This document shows positions 1 through 34,326 of a DNA stretch of 64,000 bases, piece after piece; within the stretch, counting starts at the first letter, position 1, and each line of letters opens with the position of its first letter. Under the pieces are notes generated by a model, which searched no databases, had not been told where the DNA came from, and was given only the letters and a program-made list of their open reading frames with translations. The position numbers and the translations under genes are program-made. The DNA comes from Mytilus trossulus. Taxonomy: Eukaryota. The stretch spans positions 51,522,001 to 51,586,000 of the forward strand of contig NC_086373.1 of the NCBI RefSeq assembly GCF_036588685.1, given 5' to 3'.

Positions 1-1046
1 TTGGCATGAAGAAAGGTGATATCTGTACGATTCAGGACATACCTGGTTTGTAAGAGGTTAAACTTAAGATAAAAAATTTAGAAAGCTATGAAAATTGCAA
101 AATTTGGTTGAACAGATAGGGACTTTTAATTGGTGGTCTGACACCTTAAGTTAAAAGTGCACAAACCGAAACTATACCGACCACGTCGGAATAAAAATGT
201 ATGCCCAATTAGCACAAACCGACACATATAAACTACTGTTATTGAAACATAGTAAGCAAGAACACGTTTAATGCACGAAATTAAGTTAATACAATTATAA
301 AAAAAAATTACAGCTCATAAAAAAGTTCACACATATAAAAATAGGGAGGACCATGCGCATGTGCATTCATATTGAGGTCTTTGATACTTAAATTAGAAAT
401 ATTCCTTTATTTTGTTATGTCAACAATTGAAATAATCGGCTTATTAAAACATTTGAATTAAAACAGTTAGCCAAAAGGCTAATGTCAATACTGAAAAGAG
501 ATAACAACTTGTACTTGATATTAATGTTTGTCAGTTATATTAGTGTAAGATTAAAGTTAATCTTTCTTACTATAAAATGTCATTGTGACATAATTTTACA
601 TATCTCATTCTTAAATATGTATCAAAACTTACCAAAAAATATAAATCTACAATATATATAGTATAGTGTTTATAGTCAGTTTGTTTCCATTCAAACACTT
701 AAAGGGATGCGATAGATATCATAGGTGATATTAAAACACAAAAGAAGAACATAAACTACATTAAACTATTATTCTCATGGCCAATATTATTAACGAACAG
801 ATAGCAGCTTGTACATATGTCAGTGTAGGATCGATATTCTATTCATTCCTATCATCAAATAACCCGAATAATCCAGTCGTTATATTACGCTCCCTATCGA
901 TCACTACATTAACGCCTGAATGCATCCACGATAAAAATGCGTCAGACCGGAAAATTGTGACGCGTTGCATTATGGGTATTTTCTAAACATACACAATGGC
1001 GCCAAAATAAGGAGGAGCATAGTAATCCCACAACAAAAGATGTGCA

Positions 1047-4000
1047 ATGGAGTGGGAAAGTAGTGTTTGTTTACATTGTTCACACGTGTTTGACAAGAAT
1101 TTGAAAAGTGAAAGAAGAAGAAAGGTTTCTAACATCTGTGATTTGGATTTTATAGACATTATAGCCAAAACTTATAGCCTTGATTTTGATCTGTTGAAAA
1201 AATTTCTCGACGCGAATGAAGATTTATTTATATGTGCAAAATGTTATAATTCTGTTAAATCAGTTTCAACAAACAGTAAAAAATATGATCAGTCAAAAAC
1301 ATCTTTAACAGATTCTGCCTCCAATGACTTTAAGAACTTGTCTATACAGATAGAATACCGTTCTATTCCCAGTAACAATGTCAATGACAGAAGTGCACTA
1401 AAAAGAAACAGGAGTAGCCTTACTCCCACCAAGTCTGGATGTACGCCTAGAGCTAAGAAACAAGATAAAAATGTCTCAACAACGAAAACACCAAAGAATA
1501 ATAGACGACGTCTCTGCTTCTCTGACAAGAAATCAACACAGTCTCCAGGCCCTAAAGTAAAGGTAAGCATCTGCAACTGAAATTATGATTCAGCCATATA
1601 TGCATGAAAAAAGGATTTTCTTTTTCTTCTTGAGTGTTTGATTAACACAGGATATACATAAAACTGACAAACAAGATTATGTATGATTGCCAATTATACA
1701 GCTCTTAATCCAAGACCCAATGATATGTCATAAATGTAGTAGAACTTTAAAATATGTTACCAGGTTACAGTATGGGTTTATGACTCAGATTCTTGGTACA
1801 TTATTGGAACTACATGTACATAGGTAAAATGTAATTTCAATGTTTTAAATGTAAAAATGTATAAAGTCTACATTTTTTCTAAAGCAAACAGACAGAAAAC
1901 GATTACATGTATACAAAATATATATACATGTACATGTATATAAGCACTCGTATATAAGTACTCATTTATATTTAATGCATGCGCATCAACCTGCATAATG
2001 TTGTCATGGTTGTACAATGCATGTGTACACAATACATTTATTTGTGCAATAAAAGTAACTGTTGAGATTTATCTTTCAGGTGAACATAGGGTATCGTGGA
2101 AGTTCAAGGAACACAGTTTTGAAAGGACATGAGAAGTTGGCATGTCGTGCCTTAGTACATGAAGCAGTACAAAACAGCTGTAAATCACATGTTCGCATTA
2201 GATGCAAAGAAAGAAATTGGCATTGTCATCAAAAAGAAAATCAATAAAGAAATAACAGAAATAGTAAAAAACAAAGACTCCTTATTAAGGTGATCAAATC
2301 TTTCTTCCTTCTCCTGGAAATCCGCCTACAGACAATTAGAGAATAAATGTCCTTTGACAATGGACCTCCTTCAGACAATATGTGGGGAGAAGAAAAAAAA
2401 TGAACCGAGACTTGTCACCAGCATGGCCGTCCTTCTGTTTACCAGAAATCAGCAAATGAACACTATTCAATCTATAAACAGTGTGTTAATGTTCTGAGGA
2501 CATGTTAGAACAAAGGTAAGCATTTTAAGAATTAATTATATAAATATAAATCATGTACAGTACTTCATTTAAATACCAATTCAGTCTTTCCTAGAGGGCC
2601 TTTCAGCATTTCTTTATTATTTTCAGTTCATTGAGATATACATTGTATATGTACTAGGTAATTTGAAATCAAAATAATTCTTCATATATATATATATATA
2701 TGTAATAAGAAAAAATCTGTTCGGCACACATTGATCTTCTTCACATGCAACTAGTTGATGTGGTACTTATATTTGTTGGGAGCATTTGTATAAGAGTTTG
2801 CACTTTATAAAATATTTCTGTTCTTAGGTTGTGTTTTGAATTGACTCTTTGACACAATCCCTTTGTCCATTCGCAACAACATGGTGTTTCAAAAAAATAT
2901 TTATGCAACATTTTTTGGTTCACCTTCAGTTCTCAAATATTATTTGCTTTCCACCGTGATTGAGTTTTAATTATCACAACATCTGCAGTTGTACTGTACA
3001 TTATTAGATATACATTACATGACCAGCAAATCTCAATGGTTTATTTTATTTCTTCAGGTTTATACTACCTTCAACCGAGCAGGACTTAGTAGTTCCTACA
3101 AGTCCACACTGAATACAATTGATAAGCTATGTGAGAAATTTGATGAGCCTGTGAAGAGATGGACAGAGAAACTCAGCAGTGAAACAATAGATCAGAACAC
3201 TTCATTAGGTATACTTAATTATTAATTATAATTATATATAAGGCATGTTCATTTTTACCTACATGTACATGATGTCCATGTACATGCAATATAAAAAGAT
3301 ATGGTATGATTGACAATGAGACAACTCTCCACAAGAGGCCAAAATGACACAGAAATTAACAACTACAAATGTAAAGGTCACCCTATGGCCGTCAACAATG
3401 AGCAAAACCCATACCGCATAGTCAGCTATAAAATGCCCCTAAATGAGCCAAAAACAAATATGTAACACATTAACAAAGGACAACCACTGAATTACAGGCC
3501 TGTAACTATTTAATGAAAGTGTAAAAGGGAGACAAATTCTCTTAATAAAGATGCTTAAATGCTTTTATATCCATGATATCTATTTATTATATGATACATT
3601 ACTTAAGTGAAAATATATATACACGAAAACTATTATATATAGTACATGAACGTTAGTAAGAAAATGTGATATGGATGCCAAACAAAGGTTACAAGAAGTG
3701 TATATACTAGTATACATGTATAAATCGTTTTATTATATTAAAATCTTGATATCATTTGTATTATTTTGTTTTTAAGGTGATCATACATATTCAGCAACCA
3801 GTGATGAAAGTAATGTAGAGAACATTGCCACAGATGATAACATTCTACACATCCAAAGTCCACCAGTAATGTACATAGCAGAACCTATAACAGATGCATG
3901 TACCACTTCAGATTTTACCTCATTAGATACATGTCAAGAGACAGTTCCAAATACAGACTCTCCTATGGAAAAGCAGTATGACTTTGTGGATAATGGTAAG

Positions 4001-7000
4001 CACATGTAATGTGTATTTTCTGTGTGGCTTCCTTATTTTTTTAGAGTAACTCACACTACCGGTAATCTAGAACCACTGAAGTGTTTAAGAAGAACAAGGA
4101 AATAGCTGTCAAAAATAACTTCAAAGCTGTCACTGTCAGTATTGTAATTTTGTTAATATGAGGGTCTAAGTGTGGTGTATATTTATATTGGTTCTTTTCC
4201 TTTATCTAAAACTGAATTGGGGAAATGCTGAGACTTATAAGAGAAAACAGCTTATTTTTGATTCATGGCGTCTCGATGAGACACTAATATTTTGTATACA
4301 TGTGTATCTTGCCAAGTTGTAATTTACCTATCTAATTCTTATATATGTTCTGTGTATCAAATTTGAATTTATTTTACAGGTACATCTGTTCCACCTGGAA
4401 CTACTTTATGTAGCATAGAAAACAACACATCTTATTACACACCAATGCAACCATCAGTACCATGTGAAGAAGATTCTCCATATACAACTAAGTCGTCAGA
4501 AGCAATTCAGGAAACAGGTTCTTTCCAAATCATTATGGACAACTTGAATATGAACCAAAAGACTAGACACAAGACTGAAGATACCAGCAACAAGGTGCAC
4601 AACTTGGTCCATTCAATGGCAGTTAATGATAGAGCAACACCAACCGACCCGCTAGACGAGATACACCCTCAAGCTGACATTCTATCACTATCTAATGAAT
4701 TGTTCATTCCAAGTGACAATGACATACACAATCTGAATGAAGATTTTAAAATTTTGATCCAAAGAGCTTTAGTAGACAACATCCCAGGACTATCTGAGTA
4801 CCGACAAGTTGTGCAGTACCATATACTACATGAGTTTTCACAACAGGCTGAAAAGAAGAGCACAGTTGTGAGTCTTAAATAATTGTAACATTTTGCATGT
4901 AACATCGTATAACAATCTCACCCTTTCTTTTTTGGATGATCAATGCATATGAATGGAGACGTGTCTTTATCCTGTGTTAAGACCCCCCTCCCCTTTTTTT
5001 TTAAATGGCTGGATCTGCCCCTGCACCCTGCCATCAATGTAATTAATAATTCGATATATATGGTGTAAATAATAATCATGTTCAGACAATAAGAAAATGC
5101 ATTAAATAAAAGGGAGAAATATTGCTGAAGAAAAAAGATATTATATTAACATTGAAAATTGTTCAACTTAAAAATGAGAGAGAAAAAATACTGCCAATGT
5201 GTTCTGCATAAATTTTAATTTTAATCAAAACAAGTTCTTGGTGTTTTCTGTAAAAAAATTTAACATATTATTCTTTTTTATAATTATATTATGTTGCTTT
5301 TATTTCCAGATACCATTAGGAATTCTTGAGAAGGATGAAAACATCACAGAACAAATGATTGATGTAATTACACATTTACAACAGTATGTGCCAAAGAGGG
5401 ACAAGAAATTAAAGCCATTATTGTTGGGTGGCGATGCCTTGAGTGTTGAGAGGGGTGAAGCTGCACAGAAAGCCAGAATTGATGCAGTGACATGTGAAGA
5501 CAGATTAGATGGCTTTATATGGAAAAGTGAAGATTGGCATGGCCATGTTATATCACTACAGGTATATATATATCTATTTTTCCTAGTTCCTCTATACAGT
5601 TGTAAGTGCTACTAAATTAAGGAAATTAATATGGAATTTTAAACTCTCATTTATCATCATATTACTATTATAGTGGAATTTCGCTAAATCCCAAGTCTAG
5701 TTGTTGTATCTGATATTCTCATCGATGAACAAAATCCGAAAATAGTATCATGTATACAACTTGAAAATGAACCTCTTATATATTTATCATACGAAAAGCC
5801 TTTGCATCATTATTATTTATACATTTCCATGAGTCGTATGAATTTATTTGTTCTATTTCAAACAATGCTTAAACAATTATGTATACATGTACATGTAACA
5901 AATAAATTTATTTGTTCTAAATATTTTTTATTATTTTCAGGATACCTTCAACCTCCATTTCAAGGGTTCTTCATCTGGTGAAATGGGAACATTGTTCCAA
6001 TTGAAAAATAAATTTGACAGAAGAGGTGTGAAATCAGAGGTACATATACATAAATTTCTTTCCATTTACAAATGTTAGTTTTGTGAAACATTAACAAACA
6101 TGATAAGAAAAGAGCAAATTATCTAACATTGCAAAAATTACAGTGGGAATGTATTGAAACGGTGAAGATTGTTTCATGATTATCATAATTATTTACATGA
6201 CAGTTTACAACTGGTTTTGATATATTTTATCTTCATAAAGATTCTTTTCTGTTGAATGTTATATGCATGTATTTGGTATGAAGACTGGGTAATGAGACAA
6301 CTATTCGCCCAAATGAAGTTGATGTATATTGTATAACTTTCAAATAAAATGTAATTTTTATATTTCAACCTTAATTTTTTTCTTTTCTCTTCTTTATAGG
6401 TGAAAGATGCAGTAAATGATTGTAGAGAATTTTTAAGATTTGTAACAAGAGGATATATAATTCTTGGAGCCATGCACTTGTTAGGTTTTGATTCTTTAGA
6501 TAAATTTAAAGACCTCAATCATACTTCCGACACTCAAAAGAAGGAATTCCTGGAAAAACTTTCACAAGACATAGTAGACAAGTACATTGCTACAGAAAAA
6601 TTTGATTTAGAAGCATTTAAACAAACCAATACACAAGAAGAAGGAAGACATATGTGTGGATATCCGGGGTGCAAGAAAAGTTTTGCTGTAGATGGGAAAT
6701 GTAGATCCAAACACAGGTTTCGGTGTCCGTATAAAGAGTTTGAAGGTGTTATACAGCCAAATAATGAGAATGACCAACAAGTCCAAAGCACCATTGAGGT
6801 CGAAAAAGATAAGAAGGAAGACTTTAAACGCAACTACAGCTGCAGTTTGTTGAGGGATGGGCTTTTTGACTGGTGTAGAGAAGATGCTGCAAGAGAAAAT
6901 GATGGTGAACGTTTAGTTAGAATGTGGCGATTTGACATTCTAAAATTCGCTTTAAACAATCATGTAAAATACAGACTATTAGCTTTTAAATTACATGCAC

Positions 7001-7482
7001 AACTGTTAGCAATATTGCCTCCGAAACAAGCCTTTCAATTGAAAAACAATCGAACTGTTAACATACACGGTGGAAAGGGTGCTAATGTTCCAGGAGACCT
7101 TGCTCTCGAGTTTATGAACATGAGGGCAAAAGATGCGTTAAACTCTCTCAGAGGCAACATGACAAGTGCTTCAATTGAAAGGTGCGGGAGAAGTCTCCAA
7201 GGCTGCAATGACATCATAGATTCCTATACAACAGGATTAAACCAATTTTTTGGAAAGCCTTCAAACACCAAGCCATCAATTCAGAAAGATATTGACATTC
7301 TTGTAAAACATTTACAACCAGAAGAACTTTTTCAAGACATTCCAGGAAGATGTCACAGGACATTTGACAGTATAAGCTCAAATTGCTTAACCAAGTTGGA
7401 TGGACAAAAATTGAACTCTTGGCTCACCAGCAAAAAAGAAGAATTTTCAAAGACACAAAGACTACGGTCTTATTTAGTTTAA
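1047..7482 (+). pseudogene. Spliced Academ/DUF6589-like DDE transposase (8 exons, ~1080 aa), exon 2 disrupted
   Basis: GT-AG exons read by hand: 1047-1562, 2080-2515, 3058-3208, 3777-3995, 4380-4867, 5310-5561, 5941-6039, 6400-7482. Motifs: N-terminal CxxC...CxxC, FQIIMDNLN, LLGGDALS...SEDWH, a C2HC-like CGYPGCKKSF...H...C insert, and NVPGDLALEFMN. Exon 2 is 436 nt (frameshift near 2160) with in-frame TGA at 2291 and 2495; all other exons are open. Confidence 0.8.
3292..3500 (+). repeat. Short interspersed repeat (TGAGACAACTCTCCA family) in transposase intron 3
   Basis: Related to 8920-9160 (reverse orientation), 11365-11430 (fragment) and 22441-22735. Confidence 0.65.
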
Positions 7483-7599
7483 TTACAAATTTAGTGCTTT
7501 GATTTATAAATAGTATGATGGTGCTACATATTTTACCGAACATGTACATTTTTTATTTCTTGTTTGATGAGCTTCATATTTTTTAGTAGTGCTTTTAAT

Positions 7600-8010
7600 G
7601 TGTCCTTCTTTTGAGTTTAAATTGATGTGTGCTTCTTTTGTTCGTACATATGTGCTGTTAGTGCTTTTAGTGTATCGATGTGTCCTGCTTTGTGTTCAAG
7701 TTAATGTTCTGGTTGTTTATATTGATAAAAGTGGCTGTTGTCTGTACATATTTACCTTTTTTTTGTCTATTATTTTGTGTTTTTTTTTTGTACATATTGA
7801 AGTGTGCTACATGTATATATTGATGTGTGTCCTACATGTTTATATTGATGTGTGTCCTACATGTTTATATTGATTTGTGTGCTGCTTTTGATTGTACATA
7901 TTGAAGAGTGCTGTCTGCTGAGTCTGTTTGTATTGTGTTGTTTGTTTATAATGATGTATACTACTTGTGTTTTGATGTGAGCTGCTTTTGTTCGTACATA
8001 TTTGCTGTTA
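7600..8010. repeat. Degenerate TG-rich minisatellite downstream of the transposase stop
   Basis: Recurring ~24-bp units such as TTGATGTGTGTCCTACATGTTTATA (7821-7870). Confidence 0.6.
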
Positions 8011-8919
8011 TCATGGTTATATGCTATTTTTTTCCAATCAACTTGGTAATTGATTTCTGGAGTACTTAACTAGTTTCTAAAAAATAATATTAATTTGAAT
8101 AGAAATTAAAATCATGAATTTGAATTGTTTGAAATTAAGTTGGTACATTTGAATTTATATTAAATTCAGTATCTGATACATGTACTCATTTTTTGGTTGG
8201 ATAATTGTTATTTTAAATGTTTATTTTTAATGATGTTTACTTTGAGGCAACACTAGTCTTTTTGTTTGTTAAACTTAGGTATTAAAGAAATTTTGATAAG
8301 GTCTTTCTAGTAATGAAGAAAATCTGTTTTAAGTAAATATAAATGCCTCCTATCATATATACATGTACATGTGTGTGTTTAGTTTTATTTATGATACATT
8401 TTAATTTATTTTGATCTATTCAGATCTTAAATAAAATTTGAATACAACTTGCATTGTTTTGATTCTATATACTTGTCAGTTTCAGTTATCAAATAAAAGT
8501 CTTTAATGATTGTTAATTCAGAAACTTGTTATTCTTTGTGTTGTGGTTGATGATCCAGTGAGTACAGCTAATTTCCACTGTTGGTTTTCTCCATACCCTT
8601 TGTTGGTGTACCATAACAAAATTTACAAACCTCTAGCTTAAAGAAAGTAGAAACATACCAAATGGGACAATTCAAGGTTAGGTTGGTGCCATCAATTTTA
8701 AACCTGTTAAAATCCACCAAATTCAATACAATGAAATACATGTCTCTTGGTGGCAATCATACCACAATATATGTTTAAAACCATTGAGAAATTAAACAAG
8801 ACAAACAGCAGACATAATAACACTAAAAACTCTGAAATACAACAAATAACTGGAGTTATCCTAGAAGAAGTTACTGTACCATGTGTAATGTCTGGACTAA
8901 TTGATAACTTATTTATGTA

Positions 8920-9160
8920 TGTGCCTGTTCCAAGTCATGAGCCTGTTATTCAGTGGTTGTCGTTTGTTTATGTGTTACATATTTGTTTTTCGTTAATGAA
9001 TTGTTTTACATTGTCTTATCTGGGCCTTTTATAGCTGACTATGCGGTATGGGCTTTGCTCATTGTTGAAGGCTGTACGGTGACCGTTGTTAATGTCTGTG
9101 TCATTTTTGTCTTTTGTGGATAGTTGTCTCATTGGCAATCATACCACATCTTCTTTTTTA
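8920..9160 (-). repeat. Short interspersed repeat (TGAGACAACT family) between the transposase and helicase genes
   Basis: Reverse-complement similarity to 3292-3500 (GTCTCATTGGCAATCATACCACATCTTCTTTTTT end). Confidence 0.65.
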
Positions 9161-9391
9161 TATCATTTTATATTCTTGAATTAATGTTTACTATTGTACA
9201 CCTTGTACCCATCAAACAAACAAGCACACAACAAATTTTGGCAATGAAAAGTCAGTGCAAATAAATAACTATAATATTTCTATTTATTTTAAAAGTACAC
9301 AAGACAATCATGACATTGTGGATATGTTATGTATGAGAAATATTTATGTTACATTGTACTCAAAAAAATACTTATCAACTCAGTATTGTCA

Positions 9392-9630
9392 GAAATCCCA
9401 CACATACCATGCATACAGTTGTACGTATCTTTATCTGAGCATTAAAAATTGAACATCTACAGACATGTAGATTACACGATAAAAAAAATAGAACTTGGAT
9501 GAGTTTATGAAATCCCACACATACCATGCAAACAGTTGTACGTATCTTTATCTGAGCATTTAAAATTGAACATCCATAGACCTGTAGGTTTACACGATAA
9601 AAAAAAACTGAACTTGGTTGAGTTTATGAA
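9392..9630. repeat. Two-copy 117-bp tandem duplication
   Basis: GAAATCCCACACATACCATGCA...GAGTTTAT begins at 9392 and again at 9509. Confidence 0.85.
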
Positions 9631-9755
9631 AATACATTGTAAATATTGTATGTTGCATTTCAAAAACAAAATTCATGCAATATTTGGACACAAAAAATTT
9701 AGAACTTTTGAAAATACATTGTACATATTGTATGACCCTACATCACTGTATGTAC

Positions 9756-12012
9756 TTAGACTTCTTCAATAAGTGTTAAAATATCTGCAGCAAGCTCAGG
9801 GCTAACAAGTCCTAGAGATATCACATCATCTTCACATAACAAATATGGTGCATTTTTTACAATGTGGTCTAAAGCAAAGTCCTCTAACTCACATGAAAGT
9901 TCACTTTCTTCCTCAATAAGACATTCTTTGTAGTCTAATAAGTTTTCACGAAGTAATCGTCGTTGTTCAAGAGAAAGATCTCTTTTAATACCAGTGTTAA
10001 AGTCTTCATCAAGAACCGATGAGTTATTTAATTCCCTACCTAGAAATTGGCTTTCACTACAGAATCCACAGACACACTTTAATTTGCAGTTACTACAGCA
10101 TGTACAAGGAGGATCAGGCTTTATAACACTATAACCACTAGTATCTAATTGAAAGTACGCACACAAAGTATTCCTTAAACAGTCTTCAGTCTTAAAAAAT
10201 TCTCGCACTTCTTCTGAACAGTTTCCCTTAGCCAAGTCATATCCACTGAAGTAGATAATTGAAACGGCTGAGCAACCATCTCTGCCTGCCCTGCCACTTT
10301 CTTGTGAGAATTGCTCTAGACCTCGTGGCCCTCCCCAGTGAATGACACGCTTAATGTCAGGAATGTCTATACCCATTCCAAACGCAATGGTAGCAAAAAC
10401 AACACGCAGAGAACTGTCAAGTTTCTGAAACTCATCCAACACATGACTTTTATTGATATCAGCAGTCGAACGGTGAAACATTCCTATCAATCTATTATCT
10501 AGAGATACACTTCTGTCATGTAATGAAATTCTGAAATACTCATACAAATTGGAACAAGATACAATATTTCTGCAATATATGATTGTCTTTTTGGTTGATT
10601 TTTCAAATTTAAGTAGGTCGTTAATCAACCAGTCTAAATCTGCCAAATTCTTACTACTTTTTTGCACATAATATGATAAATTTGGTCTTTCTGGTATCAC
10701 GGAAATAATGCACGTTTTTTTCATGTCCATATCAAGAGTTTTCATAATGTCTTTCTTTATTGATCTTGTTGCAGTTGCTGTTAAAGTCACAAAAGTAGTT
10801 TTTTTTGGAACAACAGATCGAAGTTCTCCAAGATGACTATACTCCTTGCGAAATTCACCACCCCTGAAATAGCAAAAAAGAAATATATAATGTACAGAAA
10901 TAAACTGACAATCTTCTTAATGCATTAAATGAAGCATACACACAACTCCTTCTTTCCATTTTGAGGCAACCCAATCTATTGGGAAGCATTTTAATCATTT
11001 GTTTTTCAATGAAATTTTATAGTTTTAAAACCAAAAAATAAATCTGTTAACCCTTTTGCTGCCAGGTGTTTTTCAGGGTTGCATTTCATATGCCAGAAAA
11101 TACTACATTGTACCACTCAACATTAATGACGTTACATGCCAAACAGTGACTTCATACCGTATAAATGACCGTTACATTGAAAGCCAATGTTTTAATAAAT
11201 TAAAACATGGACATAAATGTCCCTCCAGCAGTCGGTGTGGACATGTCCATGTCTGTCATATGATATTTGTTTTTCATAATTGTTATGTTAAAGTTTAGTT
11301 GTTGTCTCAACTGAATTGTTCAGATGAAGCTGTCTTTTAAACATCTAATATCCATATCATCTGAACTTTTGTGGATAGCTATAGTTGTCTCGTTGGCCAA
11401 CATACCATACCCACATCTCCTTTTTCATTTTGTGACATACAAAATTGTTGCCTTCATATAACATGTATAAATTTAATCAGTTAACCTTTAACTGTTCATA
11501 AAAAAAATAATAGATAAATACACATTATATAAATTATATCGTAAAAATTACCATTGTGTTATACAGTGAGCCTCATCTATAACAACTGCCTTCAAATTGT
11601 CGTGGAAAACACCCTGTGTAATACATCTCCGCCATGGACCTTTATTCAATACTGCTTCAGGAGAGGAAAACACAATGGAGAATTCACCCTCGATAATTCG
11701 TGCCGGAAAACTTTTGTCTGTTTGCTTTTCCCCAAGGAATGTAGCACTAACACCATTGTTTTCAAGTTTGGTAACCTGGTCAATCATTAGGGCTTGGATA
11801 GGTGATATAACAAGCACTGTCCCTTTGGCGTGGGTTACAAGTTCGTACAATTCTGGCAAATGTGAGTAAATTTTGGACTTGCCGTAACCAGTTGGCAGAA
11901 CAACGAAGGTATCCTGACAGTTAAATATGGATGTAATAGCGAGCTTTTGTTTTTCTTTAAATATAAAGTCATATTTAGCTTCTAAATCTTGTGGGGCTTC
12001 AACGATGTCCAT
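9756..12012 (-). CDS. RecQ-like superfamily-2 DNA helicase of the transposon, 522 aa, 2 exons
   Basis: Exon 1 12012-11552 and exon 2 10863-9756 (GT-AG intron splitting a Trp codon) join in frame (1569 nt). Motifs: LPTGYGKS (I), ISPIQALM (Ia), IDEAHC (II), QWGGEFR aromatic loop, LTATAT (III), ATIAFGMGID (V), QESGRAGRDG (VI) and a C-terminal CLR...CCSNC zinc-binding module. Confidence 0.92.
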
Positions 12013-12029
12013 GTTTTTGTTTTGAATTC

Positions 12030-12140
12030 AACAACCGGAAACTACGGAAGTGAGTTCTGCGCAAAATCATGCATAATTATAATGACCTGCGATCTGATTG
12101 GGCCCTCTCAGCGACAGGGCTGCTGACGCGTCCAATGATC
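12030..12140 (-). promoter_or_regulatory. Putative promoter of the transposon helicase
   Basis: Between the helicase ATG and the right TIR: ETS-like CCGGAA and CGGAAGTG (~12035-12051), and CCAAT-type boxes CTGATTGG (~12094) and TCCAATGA (~12131). Motif matches only. Confidence 0.35.
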
Positions 12141-12330
12141 ATGAAGAATTCAAGCCCTCGAAAGGTGGAGAGAATCGGAGACGGTAAGGGCTTGAATTAT
12201 TCGAGTTAATCATCAAATATCATTTGATATAATTTAACATAGCAAATCATAAACATTTATACGGCAACGTGCCAGAACATATAAAAATAATAATATTATG
12301 ATGTTTACAAATCATCACCTGACATAAACC

Positions 12331-13054
12331 GTGTGCAAAATTCCGGTTCAATCTAATTACTATGTCATGACGCAGAAATATATAGATTTTAACATGAGGC
12401 TCTCGAGAAGGGTTTATATGTTGTTCGACGTACATCTTGTTTATAAAACGTAAATATACATTAAGAATTGAGTACACATAAAATGTAGAATGATGTGATT
12501 CGATGAGATTATATTTTTTATAGTAATTTAAACTAAGTCGTTGTTAAGTTAAGCTAGACAGAAATATTGATTATGACATATGACGTAGTATACACTATGT
12601 CGGCCCTCAGATGGCATAGTTTTGCACACGAAATGTTTTAATATAATATAGATATCGGCATAGAGGCAAAACATCACGTGACATACACCGTGTGCAAAAC
12701 TCTTGACCAATGTTATTACTATGTTCTGACGCAGTAAGATATAAATATGGACATGAGGCTCTCGGGAAGGATTTATATGTTGTTCAACATACATTGTAGT
12801 TATTAAATGTAAATATGCCTTAGGGAAAAAAGTACAAATAAATTATAGAATGATGTTAGTCGATCATATGTTTTTCACTAATTTAAGCCTAGTCTCTGTT
12901 AAGTTAAGCTAGACTAAAAATGATGATAATGACATACGACATAGTATGCACTATGTTGAACCTCAGATGACATAGTTTTGCACACGAAATTTTCTATGTT
13001 AAACCTCAGATGACATAGTTTTGCACACGAAATCTTCTCAGATTGTTATATAAA
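12331..13054 (+). promoter_or_regulatory. MT gene 1 promoter: 5 MREs + TATA
   Basis: TGCACAC (TGCRCNC core) at 12331(-), 12623(+), 12690(-), 12979(+), 13022(+); TATATAAA at 13047. Confidence 0.88.
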
Positions 13055-13123
13055 AATGGACATACTACCAGAATACAACAATTCTATTTTATATCATTCA
13101 ACAGACAAACCTCGACGAATAAA

Positions 13124-15278
13124 ATGGCTGGACCTTGTAACTGCATTGCAAGTAAGTACTTTACATATATAAACTATTTTATAGAAATTTTACCTAACAT
13201 ATAATATTTGGTAATAATTAAAACAAATAGATGCTATGTATCTTGTTTCTAACAAAATGTTAAACAGTAAATTTTGGATAATTGAAAAATTAAAGACTTT
13301 AATCAAAATTGGTGCTATAATACCTACCAGTAGAGATATTGATAGATGTGTTATTTTTGTAATCCAGGATAGAGAATGAATTGTTATCAATATGAATTGT
13401 AAGATATTAAAGTATTATGCATAAGTTGTACACTCTTCTATTTATTTTGTCCTGCGTTCCCTCCCCTGTTACATGCCCGCCTTACTTATTAGTTACTGAT
13501 AAGTGTAAAGGACAACATTTCATTATCCATGGGTAGGGCAGACGGGTTACTAAGGACTGAATATCTATTTAATATGTTGCTATCCACACTAAGTGTTTCC
13601 CATTGTCTTACCAGGGTAGAATATTTATTTTCAAAATGCTCATCGCTGGCTCTATCCGAAAATCAGATATTCATTAAACTTTCTTGGGTTTTGTTGATTT
13701 TTTTCATGCAATTATTATAATCTTGAATATCAAGGTACTGCTAAAGATAATCCAAAGTTTGCCATTTATGTAATTTAAGTGAAAATTTAAAGAATAATTG
13801 TGAGTCCCTAAAAATCACTTATATTGTTGTTTTACTTTATGTGTAGCAAACGTGTGTATCTGTGGTACCGGATGCAGCAAGAAATGTTGTCGATGTGGAG
13901 ACCTCTGCAAATGTGCAGGACTTAATGGATGCGCATGTTCCGGATGTACAGTCGTTTGCAGATGTTCAGGTTTGTTTATATTTACAACTTTTAAGTAGAT
14001 TTTCATTTTATTTACATAATTTGATTTTTTACATACAATATAATAAGAAGATGTGCGAGGTCTTGTTCTTCTAGATTAAAGTATCAATAAGTACACATGG
14101 AAATGATTCAGTGTTGAGACGCCATAAACAATCTCTAAACGGCACGACCGTGGTCAATTTCTTAAAATCAACAAAACGGATAGATATGATGTCGAATTAA
14201 TGTACCTATAATTGTACATATATAACAACTTATAATTTATCATGTTGATATTTTACAAAGACAATAGTATTTTCAGTGTTTTCCTTTTGCAGAACCAGTT
14301 AATGCCTTAAATTGTATACATATGTGTTAAAAATCCGAATGGATAAAGTATTTGACTGTATTATGATTTTTATTTGTTTGCATTTGTTTGTACCTATGAA
14401 ATTGTTTCGAAAATGTCCTGATACAAAATAGGTTTTATTACTTGTGCAAATGTCCTGATTAAGGAAAAAGTGTTTGAAATATTGGAGATGGGGTCGTGGG
14501 GTGGGGTCGGTGTGTTATTTAAAAAAAGGTTATATTCTTAATTTCCGGAACTAAAAAATCGTTTCAGAAGGGAAGTTAAAGAAATAACTTGCTGTATGTA
14601 TTCGTTTAACATTGTTTAGATTCTTTTTTCATTTCTAAATTAAAAGGAAAACATATGTTCATTTATTCAAAAAAAAAATATCAATGTTCGAAAAAAATAT
14701 AAACTATTGGTGATTAAGAATTTTATTATGGACTTTAAACTGTCCTTATACACGACATTGAAATTTGATACAAACGCATAAAAACATTTAGCAGAAAGAT
14801 TCGAAGAACATTTGTTTGCTAAAGTTTGTTCATAGAAGTCCCATGTTAGATTAAAGCAGTTTTGACTGACCTTTCAACACAATAAAATACCCTATGATCA
14901 CATGCATAAAACTCAAACAGCGAACAAATGACATGGAGGCTACGTCGACAATGAGCAAAACCCGATATCGTATATAGCAAGGAATAAAATGAGATGATTG
15001 GGTTTAGTAAGTTCATGCGATATTGAGTTTTATATATACGGTATGCGGACAAAACAACTTTTTCATAACAGTTTAATGTGCAATTTGCACACATATAATT
15101 CTTCCATTAAAAAGGATTATCACCTTAATATGGAAATTTCATTTTAAACGTCTATATATTAATATTGATATATAAATAATATATATATATATGTATTATT
15201 TTAGGTACCTGTGAATGTGGATGTGATTGCACTGGTCCGACAGACTGCAATTGTGAATCTGGGTGCTCCTGCAATTGA
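13124..15278 (+). CDS. MT20: Metallothionein MT20-type, gene 1 (74 aa, 23 Cys)
   Basis: Exons 13124-13151, 13847-13969, 15205-15278, [78 protein letters not shown]. Confidence 0.95.
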
Positions 15279-27632: not shown

Positions 27633-28155
27633 AGGGATGCGATAGATATTATAGAGGACATTAAAACACAAAAGAAGAACAGAAATGGGAGACAAAAGAG
27701 AAAAGCGTGTCTATTTTGTAGTTAAACTGATTAACTGATAAAACCCCGTTGTCTAAATTCCCTTAGGGTTTGAACTTTTGGTATACATGTATATTGGCGA
27801 GTTATTTACGCGAGTGACGAAGTTAATTTTTTTTTAAAAGTCATATTTAGGTTTTTGATACTTAGCTTTATTAGAAAAACTCCCGTATAAATTTATGTTA
27901 GGTATCAGTATCAGATCTTCAACTGATTCAACCATTTTAAATTCAACTATTATTCTCATGGCCAATATTATTAACAAACAGATAGCGGCTCGTACAAATT
28001 TCAGTGTAGGATCGATATTTTAATAATTCCTATTATCAAATATCACTTTGACATAATTTAACATAACTAATTCTTAAATATGTATATGGCATTGTGCCAG
28101 AAAGTATAAAAATAATAATATTTTGATGTTTGCAATACAGCACCTTACATAAACC

Positions 28156-34100: not shown

Positions 34101-34326
34101 AACCATTTTATATTAGACTATTATTCTCATGCCCAATATTATCAACGAACAGATAGCGGCTGTTACATTTTTCAGTGGAGGATCGATATTTTAATCATTC
34201 CTAATATCAAGTATGACTTTGACATAATTTTACATAGCTAATTTATAAATATGTATATGGCAACGTGTCAGAAAGTATAAAAATAATAATATTTTGATGT
34301 TTGCAAAACATCACCTGACATAAACC

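What the first reader, a model, noticed from the sequence alone, without database searches (positions are those of the whole stretch)
860..12208. Fully delimited two-gene transposon pairing a spliced DDE-type transposase with its own RecQ-like helicase
Seen: 16-bp TIRs, a perfect 9-bp TSD, two empty paralogous sites in the same window (~28030, ~34200), an 8-exon transposase-like gene on + and an intact 522-aa RecQ-like helicase on -, both pointing inward from the ends. Known: this layout matches the AcademH lineage of Academ transposons, whose helicase role is, to my knowledge, not experimentally established; ordinary cut-and-paste transposons carry no helicase. Inference: a young mussel member of a poorly characterised helicase-assisted transposition system. 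The perfect TSD and intact helicase suggest recent mobility.
Basis: partly seen in the sequence, partly recalled or inferred. Interest (0 to 1): 0.8.

Follow-up and report, generated by a model that had tools for sequence, protein, structure and literature searches.

The report
Helicase-carrying AcademH transposon in a mussel
An 11.3-kb jumping gene of a known but little-studied kind (AcademH), which carries its own RecQ-type DNA helicase gene beside its cutting enzyme's gene, sits upstream of a mussel metallothionein gene; this copy's cutting-enzyme gene is broken, but the family is transcribed and has left near-identical miniature copies.

Summary
Window 860-12208 is a fully delimited 11,349-bp DNA transposon. 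It has 16-nt terminal inverted repeats (14/16 complementary) and a perfect 9-bp target duplication (ATCATCAAA). Two paralogous units of a metallothionein gene array in the same window are empty at that site. RNA contigs confirm an 8-exon + strand gene with GT..AG introns. It encodes a 1080-codon DUF6589 transposase. A natural homologue colinear with exons 5-8 folds as an RNase H-type DDE core, closest to P-element and Hermes transposases and to retroviral integrases. The - strand gene is an intact 2-exon, 522-aa RecQ-family helicase. About 44 loci in this genome pair the same two genes, so the helicase is not a host RecQ. Sixteen insertions of the family were checked, and 15 have perfect 9-bp duplications. 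This matches AcademH (Kojima 2020), and Academ elements are already known to be abundant in bivalves. A public transcript lacks at least two of these lesions, and 106-bp miniature copies share ends 100% identical to this element's. This scan had already flagged AcademH/DUF6589 elements elsewhere in this genome. Verdict: a new member of a known kind; the helicase's role remains untested.

The parts
851..859 (.). Left copy of the 9-bp target-site duplication, ATCATCAAA
   Evidence: identical to 12209-12217
860..875 (+). Left terminal inverted repeat, TAACCCGAATAATCCA
   Evidence: identical in the C7 relative and in all derivatives
860..913 (+). Left 54 nt, kept unchanged in the 106-bp miniature copies. 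This bounds the sequence needed in cis at the left end
   Evidence: prefix of 54 nt identical
1047..1562 (+). Transposase exon 1. ATG at 1047; the mRNA contig starts at or before 982. Contains CxxC...CxxC motifs and a basic tail
2080..2515 (+). Transposase exon 2. Broken in this copy by an extra A at 2157, TGA at 2291-2293 and TGA at 2495-2497
   Evidence: the C14 copy and the C7 relative lack all three lesions; X1 and X2 transcripts lack the extra nt and read C at 2292
3058..3208 (+). Transposase exon 3
3293..3499 (.). Nested very-high-copy short repeat in intron 3. A second copy in inverted orientation lies at 8941-9155
   Evidence: 89% complementary arms; contig depth 4,000-125,000
3777..3995 (+). 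Transposase exon 4. Acidic linker, not conserved in the C7 relative but present in the mRNA contigs and in M. coruscus protein P0154
4380..4867 (+). Transposase exon 5. Holds the first catalytic Asp (codon 4538-4540, motif IIMDNLN)
5310..5561 (+). Transposase exon 6. Holds the second catalytic Asp (codon 5433-5435, motif LLGGDALSVERG). Pfam DUF6589, E 8e-7
5941..6039 (+). Transposase exon 7
6400..7482 (+). Transposase exon 8. Holds the insertion domain with a Cys/His motif and the catalytic Glu (codon 7108-7110, LALEFMNMRAK, E-x6-K). Pfam DUF6589, E 6e-19. Stop at 7480-7482
9756..10863 (-). Helicase exon 2. Contains the aromatic-rich loop GGEFRKEY, motifs III-VI (TATAT, QESGRAGRDG), a Cys4 zinc motif (C...CTCCSNC) and about 130 aa of unassigned C-terminus. 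Stop at 9756-9758
11552..12012 (-). Helicase exon 1. ATG at 12012; motif 0, Walker A (PTGYGKS), DEAH box
12156..12208 (-). Right 53 nt, kept unchanged in the 106-bp miniature copies
12193..12208 (-). Right terminal inverted repeat (TAACTCGAATAATTCA on the - strand)
12209..12217 (.). Right copy of the 9-bp target-site duplication
28032..28040 (.). Empty target site in the second metallothionein repeat unit (ATTATCAAA)
34203..34211 (.). Empty target site in the third metallothionein repeat unit (AATATCAAG)

Best explanation
Window 860-12208 is one insertion of an AcademH-type class II (DNA) transposon. The element has short TIRs and makes a 9-bp staggered cut in the target, which after repair gives the 9-bp duplication. 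It carries two inward-pointing genes, each starting about 190 nt from a terminus. One is an 8-exon gene for a roughly 1080-aa DDE transposase. Its RNase H-fold core is interrupted by a large insertion domain between beta5 and the helix that carries the catalytic Glu, as in P-element, hAT and RAG1 enzymes. The other is a 2-exon gene for a 522-aa RecQ-family helicase. Shown: the boundaries, the TSD, the empty sites, the splicing, the fold class, the RecQ kinship and the recurrent pairing of the two genes. Inferred: the transposase binds the ends (54 + 53 nt suffice in cis), excises the element and integrates it. Also inferred: the helicase is a required accessory factor of the transposition complex. 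My best guess (speculative, about 50%) is that the helicase unwinds donor ends or target DNA for strand processing, filling the place that an XPG nuclease fills in the sister lineage AcademX. This particular copy can no longer make transposase, because exon 2 has a frameshift and two stop codons. It could move only with enzyme supplied in trans. The family is still alive: a spliced mRNA that lacks at least two of the three lesions is present in public transcriptomes, and deletion derivatives with 100% identical ends are scattered over the genome.
For: Boundaries, TSD and empty sites.
Family copies: 14 independent derivative insertions (105-1175 bp) carry the same ends, 13 with a perfect 9-bp TSD and 1 with one mismatch. 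The 12.3-kb C7 relative has identical TIRs and the TSD CAGAAAATC. The 106-bp copies equal the first 54 + last 53 nt of this element (1-nt overlap), and at least 13 copies are 97-100% identical.
Transposase: Pfam DUF6589 on exons 6 and 8. Exons 5-8 are colinear with the natural 682-aa protein P0062 at 35-53% identity. The AF2 model of P0062 has pLDDT 84.9 and pTM 0.83. All 18 chains with VIA Z >= 7.9 are DDE transposases or integrases: P element Z 9.9 over 285 residues, Hermes 9.8 over 283, PFV integrase core 9.6 at rmsd 4.0 over 139, HIV IN core 9.0 at rmsd 3.3 over 121 of 138, ISCth4 8.1. D74 lies on beta1, D221 lies just after beta4 and E563 lies in a helix with E-x6-K. These map to window codons 4538, 5433 and 7108, all intact.
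Splicing and expression. Word shares of 0.35-0.41 in 14 RNA-like runs of 7 studies.
Helicase: DEAD and Helicase_C. The best solved relatives are RecQ, WRN, RECQ1, BLM and RECQ5 (E 3e-26 and 3.5e-12). The intron falls exactly at DEAHCITQW|GGEFRKEY.
Pairing: about 44 loci have a DUF6589 hit and a RecQ-like hit within 10 kb, in convergent or divergent order. Similarity scores of the two genes co-vary (rho 0.47, n 43).
Lesions.
Literature: AcademH makes 9-10-bp TSDs and AcademX 3-4 bp (PMC10045372). Academ elements are expanded in bivalves (PMC10294476).
Against: No reference Academ or AcademH transposase sequence was available, so kinship of DUF6589 with Repbase Academ is inferred from architecture, not shown. 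Repbase and Dfam are not on hand, Kojima 2020 and Yuan & Wessler 2011 are not held, and no XPG fusion turned up in the genome.
The fold test was done on a 35-53% identical amphioxus homologue, not on the window's own joined product.
Foldseek alone gave no match with E <= 0.001, and VIA Z values near 10 are only moderately above background.
Runs X1 and X2 are only guessed to be RNA. Their contigs skip every intron and leave most introns uncovered (intron 4 has faint depth, 3 and 0.6).
The third exon-2 lesion (2495) is only inferred to be absent from the X1 transcript.
The deleted C14 copy has no recognisable TSD.
Nothing here shows what the helicase does.
Confidence: 0.85

Rival explanations
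1. This copy is an intact, autonomous, recently mobile element. The exon-2 lesions would then be assembly errors or be bypassed.
For: Perfect TSD, intact helicase and all seven other transposase exons open in phase. The catalytic D, D and E codons are intact. The family is transcribed.
Against: Three independent lesions lie in one exon: an extra A at 2157, and TGA at 2291-2293 and 2495-2497. They are absent from the C14 copy and the C7 relative. The first two are also absent from the X1 and X2 contigs, and the 2292 lesion from run X15. Two of the three are substitutions, which are not typical assembly errors. The RNA joints use exon 2 in full (2080-2515), so splicing does not skip the lesions.
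Confidence: 0.08
2. The helicase is a host RecQ gene, or a one-off captured host gene, that only happens to lie between the TIRs.
For: Clear RecQ-family sequence similarity.
Against: About 44 loci in the same genome pair a DUF6589 transposase with a RecQ-like helicase within 10 kb. The C7 and C11 relatives have the same intron position. Transposase and helicase similarity scores co-vary. The protein has only 522 aa, with no RQC winged-helix or HRDC hit in Pfam.
Confidence: 0.02
3. The element belongs to another superfamily with 8-10-bp TSDs, such as a MULE-like lineage or an unnamed one. On this view DUF6589 transposases are not Academ.
For: No direct comparison with reference Academ sequences was possible. 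MULEs also make 9-bp TSDs. The closest solved folds are P element and hAT.
Against: No MULE, hAT, P or Kolobok Pfam domain was found on any exon or on 50 homologues. Only DUF6589 matched, in 49 of 50. The combination of a separate helicase gene and a 9-10-bp TSD is the published signature of AcademH (PMC10045372). Academ is the third most abundant DDE superfamily in bivalves (PMC10294476), which fits the many DUF6589 loci here. The one paper that mentions DUF6589 calls it enriched in pathogenic fungi, in a rust pan-genome study. Academ is most abundant in Pucciniomycotina and is listed in Repbase only from Puccinia graminis.
Confidence: 0.08
4. A domesticated transposase-helicase gene pair now serving the host, no longer a mobile element.
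For: Both genes have introns, and the transposase is transcribed in many samples.
Against: TIRs, TSD, paralogous empty sites, deletion derivatives with TSDs at many loci, and disabling mutations in this copy and in the C14 copy.
Confidence: 0.02

Closest known systems
AcademH lineage of the Academ superfamily (Kojima 2020, Mob DNA 11:15; cited in PMC10045372 and PMC10799480)
   Same: DDE transposase plus a separate SF2 helicase gene between short TIRs. 9-bp TSD (published: 9 or 10 bp). Low copy number, and found in animals.
   Different: Nothing that contradicts membership. Specific to this family: 7 introns in the transposase gene and 1 in the helicase gene, convergent gene order, an 11.3-kb length (the 100 curated bivalve Academ consensus sequences average 5.6 kb, PMC10294476), and derived 106-bp miniature copies. 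Kinship to the reference sequences could not be computed here.
AcademX (Academ elements whose transposase is fused to an XPG nuclease)
   Same: Same superfamily by inference, and an accessory DNA-processing enzyme travels with the transposase.
   Different: 3-4-bp TSD and a nuclease in place of a helicase (PMC10045372). No XPG domain on any exon. Only 3 XPG_I hits in the whole genome; their neighbourhoods were not examined.
P-element and hAT (Hermes) transposases, RAG1
   Same: Closest solved folds. The RNase H core is interrupted by a large insertion domain before the catalytic Glu helix (Z 9.9, 9.8 and 6.3).
   Different: 7-12% sequence identity and no shared Pfam family. Those elements encode no helicase and make 8-bp (P, hAT) or 5-bp (Transib/RAG) duplications (TSD lengths from general knowledge).
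Helitron and KolobokH (other eukaryotic DNA transposons that carry helicases)
   Same: A helicase gene is part of the element.
   Different: Helitrons use an HUH Rep fused to a Pif1-like SF1 helicase and have no TIRs and no TSD. Kolobok makes TTAA duplications. Here there is a DDE enzyme, TIRs, a 9-bp TSD and an SF2 RecQ-type helicase.
Bacterial two-protein DDE systems with an ATPase partner (Mu MuA/MuB, Tn7 TnsB/TnsC, IS21 IstA/IstB)
   Same: A DDE transposase works with a separately encoded NTPase. This is a possible functional analogy: DNA remodelling or target handling.
   Different: Those partners are AAA+ ATPases, not RecQ helicases. They are not homologous, and the analogy is untested.
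RecQ family helicases (E. coli RecQ, human RECQ1, WRN, BLM, RECQ5)
   Same: Motif 0, Walker A, DEAH, the RecQ-specific aromatic-rich loop (QWGGEFRKEY against QWGHDFRPEY), motifs III-VI and a C...CxxCxxC zinc motif.
   Different: Short (522 aa), with no RQC winged-helix or HRDC hit, and an unassigned C-terminus of about 130 aa. It is encoded inside a transposon and present at dozens of loci.

Membership tests
AcademH (Academ superfamily) | Transposase groups with reference Academ/AcademH transposases by sequence | not testable with these tools
   No Repbase/Dfam sequences are on hand, and the defining papers are not held. Pfam gives only DUF6589. The links are circumstantial: Academ abundance in bivalves, and a rust-genome paper's remark that DUF6589 is enriched in pathogenic fungi set against Academ's peak abundance in Pucciniomycotina.
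AcademH (Academ superfamily) | RNase H-fold DDE catalytic domain | tested here: met
   Tested on the colinear natural homologue P0062 (35-53% identical to exons 5-8). AF2 pLDDT 84.9. All chains with Z >= 7.9 are DDE transposases or integrases. D, D and E map to intact window codons 4538, 5433 and 7108.
AcademH (Academ superfamily) | A helicase gene inside the element, separate from the transposase | tested here: met
   Intact 522-aa SF2 helicase at 12012-9756 (-), between the TIRs. The same pairing occurs at about 44 loci.
AcademH (Academ superfamily) | Target-site duplication of 9 or 10 bp (PMC10045372) | tested here: met
   9 bp at this copy, at the C7 relative and at 14 derivative insertions. 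15 of 16 are perfect. The deleted C14 copy has none.
AcademH (Academ superfamily) | Terminal inverted repeats | tested here: met
   16 nt, 14/16 complementary, conserved in all copies.
RecQ helicase family | SF2 core with DEAH box, motif 0 and the aromatic-rich loop after motif II | tested here: met
   phmmer against PDB: the 37 best hits of exon 1 and the 38 best of exon 2 are all RecQ-family members. The alignment shows GGEFRKEY against GHDFRPEY.
RecQ helicase family | RecQ C-terminal zinc-binding subdomain | tested here: inconclusive
   The four-Cys pattern C...CTCCSNC sits at the expected place, but Pfam RecQ_Zn_bind reaches only E 0.69.
RecQ helicase family | RQC winged helix and/or HRDC domain | tested here: not met
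   No Pfam hit at E <= 1. Some bona fide RecQ members (RECQ4, RECQ5) also lack them (general knowledge), so this does not exclude membership.
MULE/Mutator (also 9-bp TSD) | MULE transposase domain (Pfam PF10551 and relatives) | tested here: not met
   No hit on any exon or on 50 homologues.
Kolobok / KolobokH | TTAA 4-bp target duplication | tested here: not met
   9-bp duplications of varied sequence.
Helitron | HUH Rep/Pif1-type helicase, no TIRs, no TSD | tested here: not met
   DDE enzyme, TIRs, TSD and a RecQ-type SF2 helicase.

The most novel reading that the evidence does not exclude
The RecQ-like helicase is an obligatory catalytic partner of the transposase. It would unwind donor ends or target DNA, so that AcademH moves by a helicase-dependent route that differs from ordinary cut-and-paste, and it may set the one-helical-turn (9-10 bp) stagger. 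This mussel family would still be active: a spliced mRNA lacks the lesions that could be checked, and the 106-bp derivatives have 100% identical ends. That would give a natural donor/helper system for testing what the helicase does.
Probability: 0.35. Interest if true: 0.65.

Novelty: new member of a known kind. Interest (0 to 1): 0.35.

Why it matters
AcademH is one of very few DDE transposon lineages in eukaryotes that carry a helicase, and no experiment has addressed the helicase's role.

This locus gives a clean reference example:
- exact ends, target duplication and empty sites;
- an RNA-supported gene model for the transposase and a conservation-based one for the helicase;
- a minimal 106-bp non-autonomous derivative;
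- evidence that the family is transcribed.

These are the ingredients for a transposition assay with and without the helicase. It also shows that proteins labelled 'DUF6589' in public databases, or mis-named ING4, png2 or unc-80, are RNase H-fold transposases. That matters for annotating bivalve and amphioxus genomes.

For the host, the insertion lies in the upstream region of one gene of a tandem metallothionein array and distinguishes it from its paralogs.

Tried and rejected
1. First structure job: I used an intronless relative from contig C22 and cut it at the start of the Pfam hit, which removed the first catalytic Asp. The alignment had only 21 sequences. The model was poor (pLDDT 61) and found only ING-type PHD fingers. 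I replaced it with P0062 and a 139-sequence alignment.
2. Foldseek against PDB with the good model gave no E <= 0.001. Only the VIA re-alignment gave a clear picture.
3. Link to Academ through XPG fusions: there is no XPG domain among 50 homologues, and only 3 XPG_I hits in the genome. No link was obtained.
4. Papers: Kojima 2020 (PMC7165386) and Yuan & Wessler 2011 are not held. The curated bivalve TE library in the supplement of PMC10294476 is stored truncated. It holds no 'Academ-H' label and no match to the TIR. There is no DUF6589 or Academ entry in the supplements of PMC10799480.
6. Rfam at gathering thresholds on 1-14000 gave nothing, so there is no hammerhead in this element's helicase intron.
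7. Raw polyA RNA run X21: no read laid, so it is no test.
All searches were done exon by exon or with natural homologues.
Full report
**Observation**

- The left end reads TAACCCGAATAATCCA (860-875). The right end, on the - strand, reads TAACTCGAATAATTCA (12193-12208). They are 14/16 complementary and are the only two matches to that pattern in the window (0.24 expected).
- The 9-mer ATCATCAAA flanks both ends (851-859 and 12209-12217).
- The sequences left and right of the element align to two other units of a tandem repeat in the same window. In each unit the two alignments overlap by 11-12 nt, which is one copy of the 9-mer (28032-28040 and 34203-34211) plus 2-3 flanking nt. So the element is an insertion that came after the duplication of those units.
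- The repeat is a tandem array of at least six metallothionein genes. The Cys-rich exon 2 lies at 13852, 29721, 36102, 47450, 54042 and 62522. The element lies about 1.6 kb upstream of exon 2 of the first gene.

**The + strand gene**

Pfam finds DUF6589 (PF20231) on the open frames at 5178-5612 (E 8e-7) and 6400-7479 (E 6e-19). Conservation with a related element on contig C7 marked seven coding blocks. Public contigs then gave the full model.
- A 4309-nt contig of run X1 (depth 28.6) and contigs of X2, from a different study, join eight blocks with GT..AG at every joint and leave most introns uncovered.
- After placing the cuts on the splice sites, the exons are 1047-1562, 2080-2515, 3058-3208, 3777-3995, 4380-4867, 5310-5561, 5941-6039 and 6400-7482.
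- Their lengths sum to 3243 nt (1080 codons plus stop) once one surplus nucleotide is set aside. Each exon is open in the phase that the joints dictate.

**The lesions**

Exon 2 of this copy is broken three times.
- An extra A at 2157 shifts the frame.
- Codon 2291-2293 is TGA where the near-identical C14 copy has TCA and the C7 relative has ACA.
- Codon 2495-2497 is TGA where they have CGA and AGA.
- The X1 and X2 contigs lack the extra nucleotide and read C at 2292. The DNA-like run X15 also reads C at 2292.
- X1 has one further unlisted difference in this exon, either T>C or A>C. It is probably 2495, but that is inferred.
- None of the listed X1 differences makes a stop. One X2 difference (4556 C>T) does, so more than one copy is transcribed and not all are intact.
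- The transposase of this copy is therefore a pseudogene, although its catalytic codons are intact.

**Fold of the transposase**

- A profile search of the 1.84-billion representative library with an alignment of bivalve relatives found 6565 representatives at E <= 0.001.
- One of them, P0062, is an 'uncharacterized protein' of Branchiostoma. It is colinear with exons 5, 6, 7 and 8 at 35-53% identity, and its alignment blocks change at the exon junctions.
- AlphaFold2 with 139 homologues gave pLDDT 84.9 and pTM 0.83.
- Foldseek was weak. In the VIA re-alignment all 18 chains with Z >= 7.9 are DDE enzymes: P-element transposase (Z 9.9, 285 residues), Hermes (9.8, 283), PFV integrase core (9.6, rmsd 4.0 over 139), HIV integrase core (9.0, rmsd 3.3 over 121 of 138) and ISCth4 (8.1). 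Prp8 RNase H (6.7) and RAG1 (6.3) follow.
- The model has five strands and the expected helices. D74 lies on beta1, D221 lies right after beta4, and E563 lies in a helix after a roughly 290-residue insertion domain, with Lys seven residues on (E-x6-K).
- These residues correspond to window codons 4538-4540, 5433-5435 and 7108-7110.
The test was run on a homologue, not on the window's own product.

**The - strand gene**

It starts at ATG 12012. Exon 1 ends at 11552 (…CAATG|GTAATT) and exon 2 starts at 10863 after …TTTCAG. The split codon TG|G restores DEAHCITQW|GGEFRKEY, and the stop is at 9756-9758.
- Pfam gives DEAD (1e-15) and Helicase_C (7e-15).
- Against all PDB sequences, the best relatives of both exons are RecQ, WRN, RECQ1, BLM, RECQ5 and RECQ4 (E 3e-26 and 3.5e-12). 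DEAD-box RNA helicases follow only at E > 1e-6.
- All SF2 motifs, the RecQ-specific aromatic-rich loop and a C...CxxCxxC zinc motif are present.
- No RQC winged helix or HRDC was detected, and about 130 C-terminal residues are unassigned.

**Is the helicase the element's own?**

Yes.
- Searching the window's own 1.3-Gb genome with the last transposase exon and with helicase exon 2 gave 74 and 116 matches.
- By my count, about 44 loci have both within 10 kb, in convergent or divergent order. Identities to the window range from 61%/51% (C7) down to about 25%/30%.
- The two similarity scores co-vary (Spearman 0.47, n 43; the loci are related, so this is descriptive only).
- The C7 and C11 relatives share the helicase intron position.

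**The family**

- Only one other long copy exists (C14, 9057 bp, about 98% identical). It lacks 8281-10821 and hence helicase exon 2. It has its own frameshifts and a stop in both genes, and no recognisable TSD.
- The C7 element is a divergent relative (about 65-70% DNA identity in the coding blocks). It is 12,327 bp long, appears to have open genes, and has the identical 16-nt TIRs and a perfect 9-bp TSD.
- Deletion derivatives of 105-1175 bp occur at many loci. Fourteen independent insertions were examined: 13 have a perfect 9-bp TSD and one has a single mismatch. One sits inside another.
- The 106-bp form is exactly the first 54 and last 53 nt of this element with a 1-nt overlap. At least 13 copies are 97-100% identical.
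- The target 9-mers show no obvious consensus.

**Age**

This copy differs from the X1 transcript at 17 of about 2600 laid exonic positions (about 0.65%) and from C14 by about 1.7%. At that divergence a perfect TSD and an open helicase frame are both unremarkable. The signs of current activity belong to the family, not to this copy.

**Mechanism**

- Shown: a TIR-bounded element that inserts with a 9-bp stagger. It has a DDE/RNase H enzyme with an intact triad, a RecQ-type helicase that has travelled with that enzyme through deep divergence, and movement of derivatives that keep only 54 + 53 nt.
- Inferred: DDE-catalysed excision and integration, with the helicase as a required accessory factor.
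- Speculative: the helicase unwinds nicked donor ends or the target, functionally replacing the XPG nuclease of AcademX. Kojima links the different TSD lengths of the two lineages to these enzymes (PMC10045372).

**Comparison with what is known**

- The architecture is that published for AcademH: a helicase gene and a 9-10-bp TSD (PMC10045372; PMC10799480).
- Academ elements are reported as expanded in bivalves, with 100 curated consensus sequences (PMC10294476).
- The Academ RNase H domain was defined by Yuan & Wessler 2011 and had no Pfam model in 2017 (PMC5751038).
- I could not compute kinship with reference Academ sequences, so membership rests on four of five defining features.
- Other readers and agents of this scan have flagged Academ/DUF6589 elements, including an AcademH, elsewhere in this genome. 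Those notes are unchecked and were not used as evidence.

**Verdict**

This is a well-delimited new member of a known kind. Interest is moderate (0.35), mainly as a clean natural system for asking what the helicase does.

Noticed in passing
window 13852, 15210, 29721, 31060, 36102, 37218, 47450, 47923, 54042, 55311, 62522, 63120 (+): Tandem array of at least six metallothionein genes, seen as Cys-rich exons 2 and 3. The transposon lies in the upstream region of the first gene, and its helicase gene faces away from that gene's promoter side.
   Followed up: partly
window 3293-3499 and 8941-9155: Two copies, in opposite orientation, of a roughly 210-bp repeat nested in the element (intron 3 and the intergenic spacer). 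Contig depth reaches 4,000-125,000 in public runs, so this is a very abundant SINE/MITE-like repeat. A copy also sits in the C7 relative.
   Followed up: partly
window 860-956 against G000:C7:23208826-23221152 (12,327-bp relative): The left 97 nt are 94% identical between two families whose remaining alignable DNA, mostly coding blocks, is only 64-70% identical (proteins 61% and 51%). Either the left end is under strong constraint or the ends were exchanged between families. Cross-mobilisation is plausible.
   Followed up: partly
L041:4842-7700 (-) and L039:5930-8614 (-), with helicase at L040:1018-2349 (+): A more distant DUF6589 family has an intronless transposase of about 950 aa with an ING-type PHD finger inside the insertion domain, and a divergently oriented helicase. 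Public databases name relatives ING4, png2 or unc-80, which looks like mis-annotation.
   Followed up: partly
run X1 contig laid on window 982-2513: About 650 nt of the 4309-nt contig lie between exon 1 and exon 2 and match nothing in the window's intron 1. This could be an assembly chimera, a different intron 1 in the expressed copy, or an extra exon. It is unexplained.
   Followed up: no
G000:C14:81071862-81080918: The only other long copy lacks 2.5 kb, including helicase exon 2. It has independent frameshifts and a stop in both genes and no recognisable TSD, which suggests a later rearrangement at its borders.
   Followed up: partly
L019 (G000:C4:34285243-34285463): A 112-bp miniature copy is inserted into the end of another miniature copy of the same family. 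Each has its own perfect 9-bp TSD.
   Followed up: partly
window 7794-7880: Short tandem repeat (period about 25 nt) downstream of the transposase stop codon. The C14 copy has more units.
   Followed up: no
L041:126-2432 (+): A Pao/BEL-type retrotransposon pol ORF (Peptidase_A17, integrase zinc domain) lies next to the C22 DUF6589 element.
   Followed up: no
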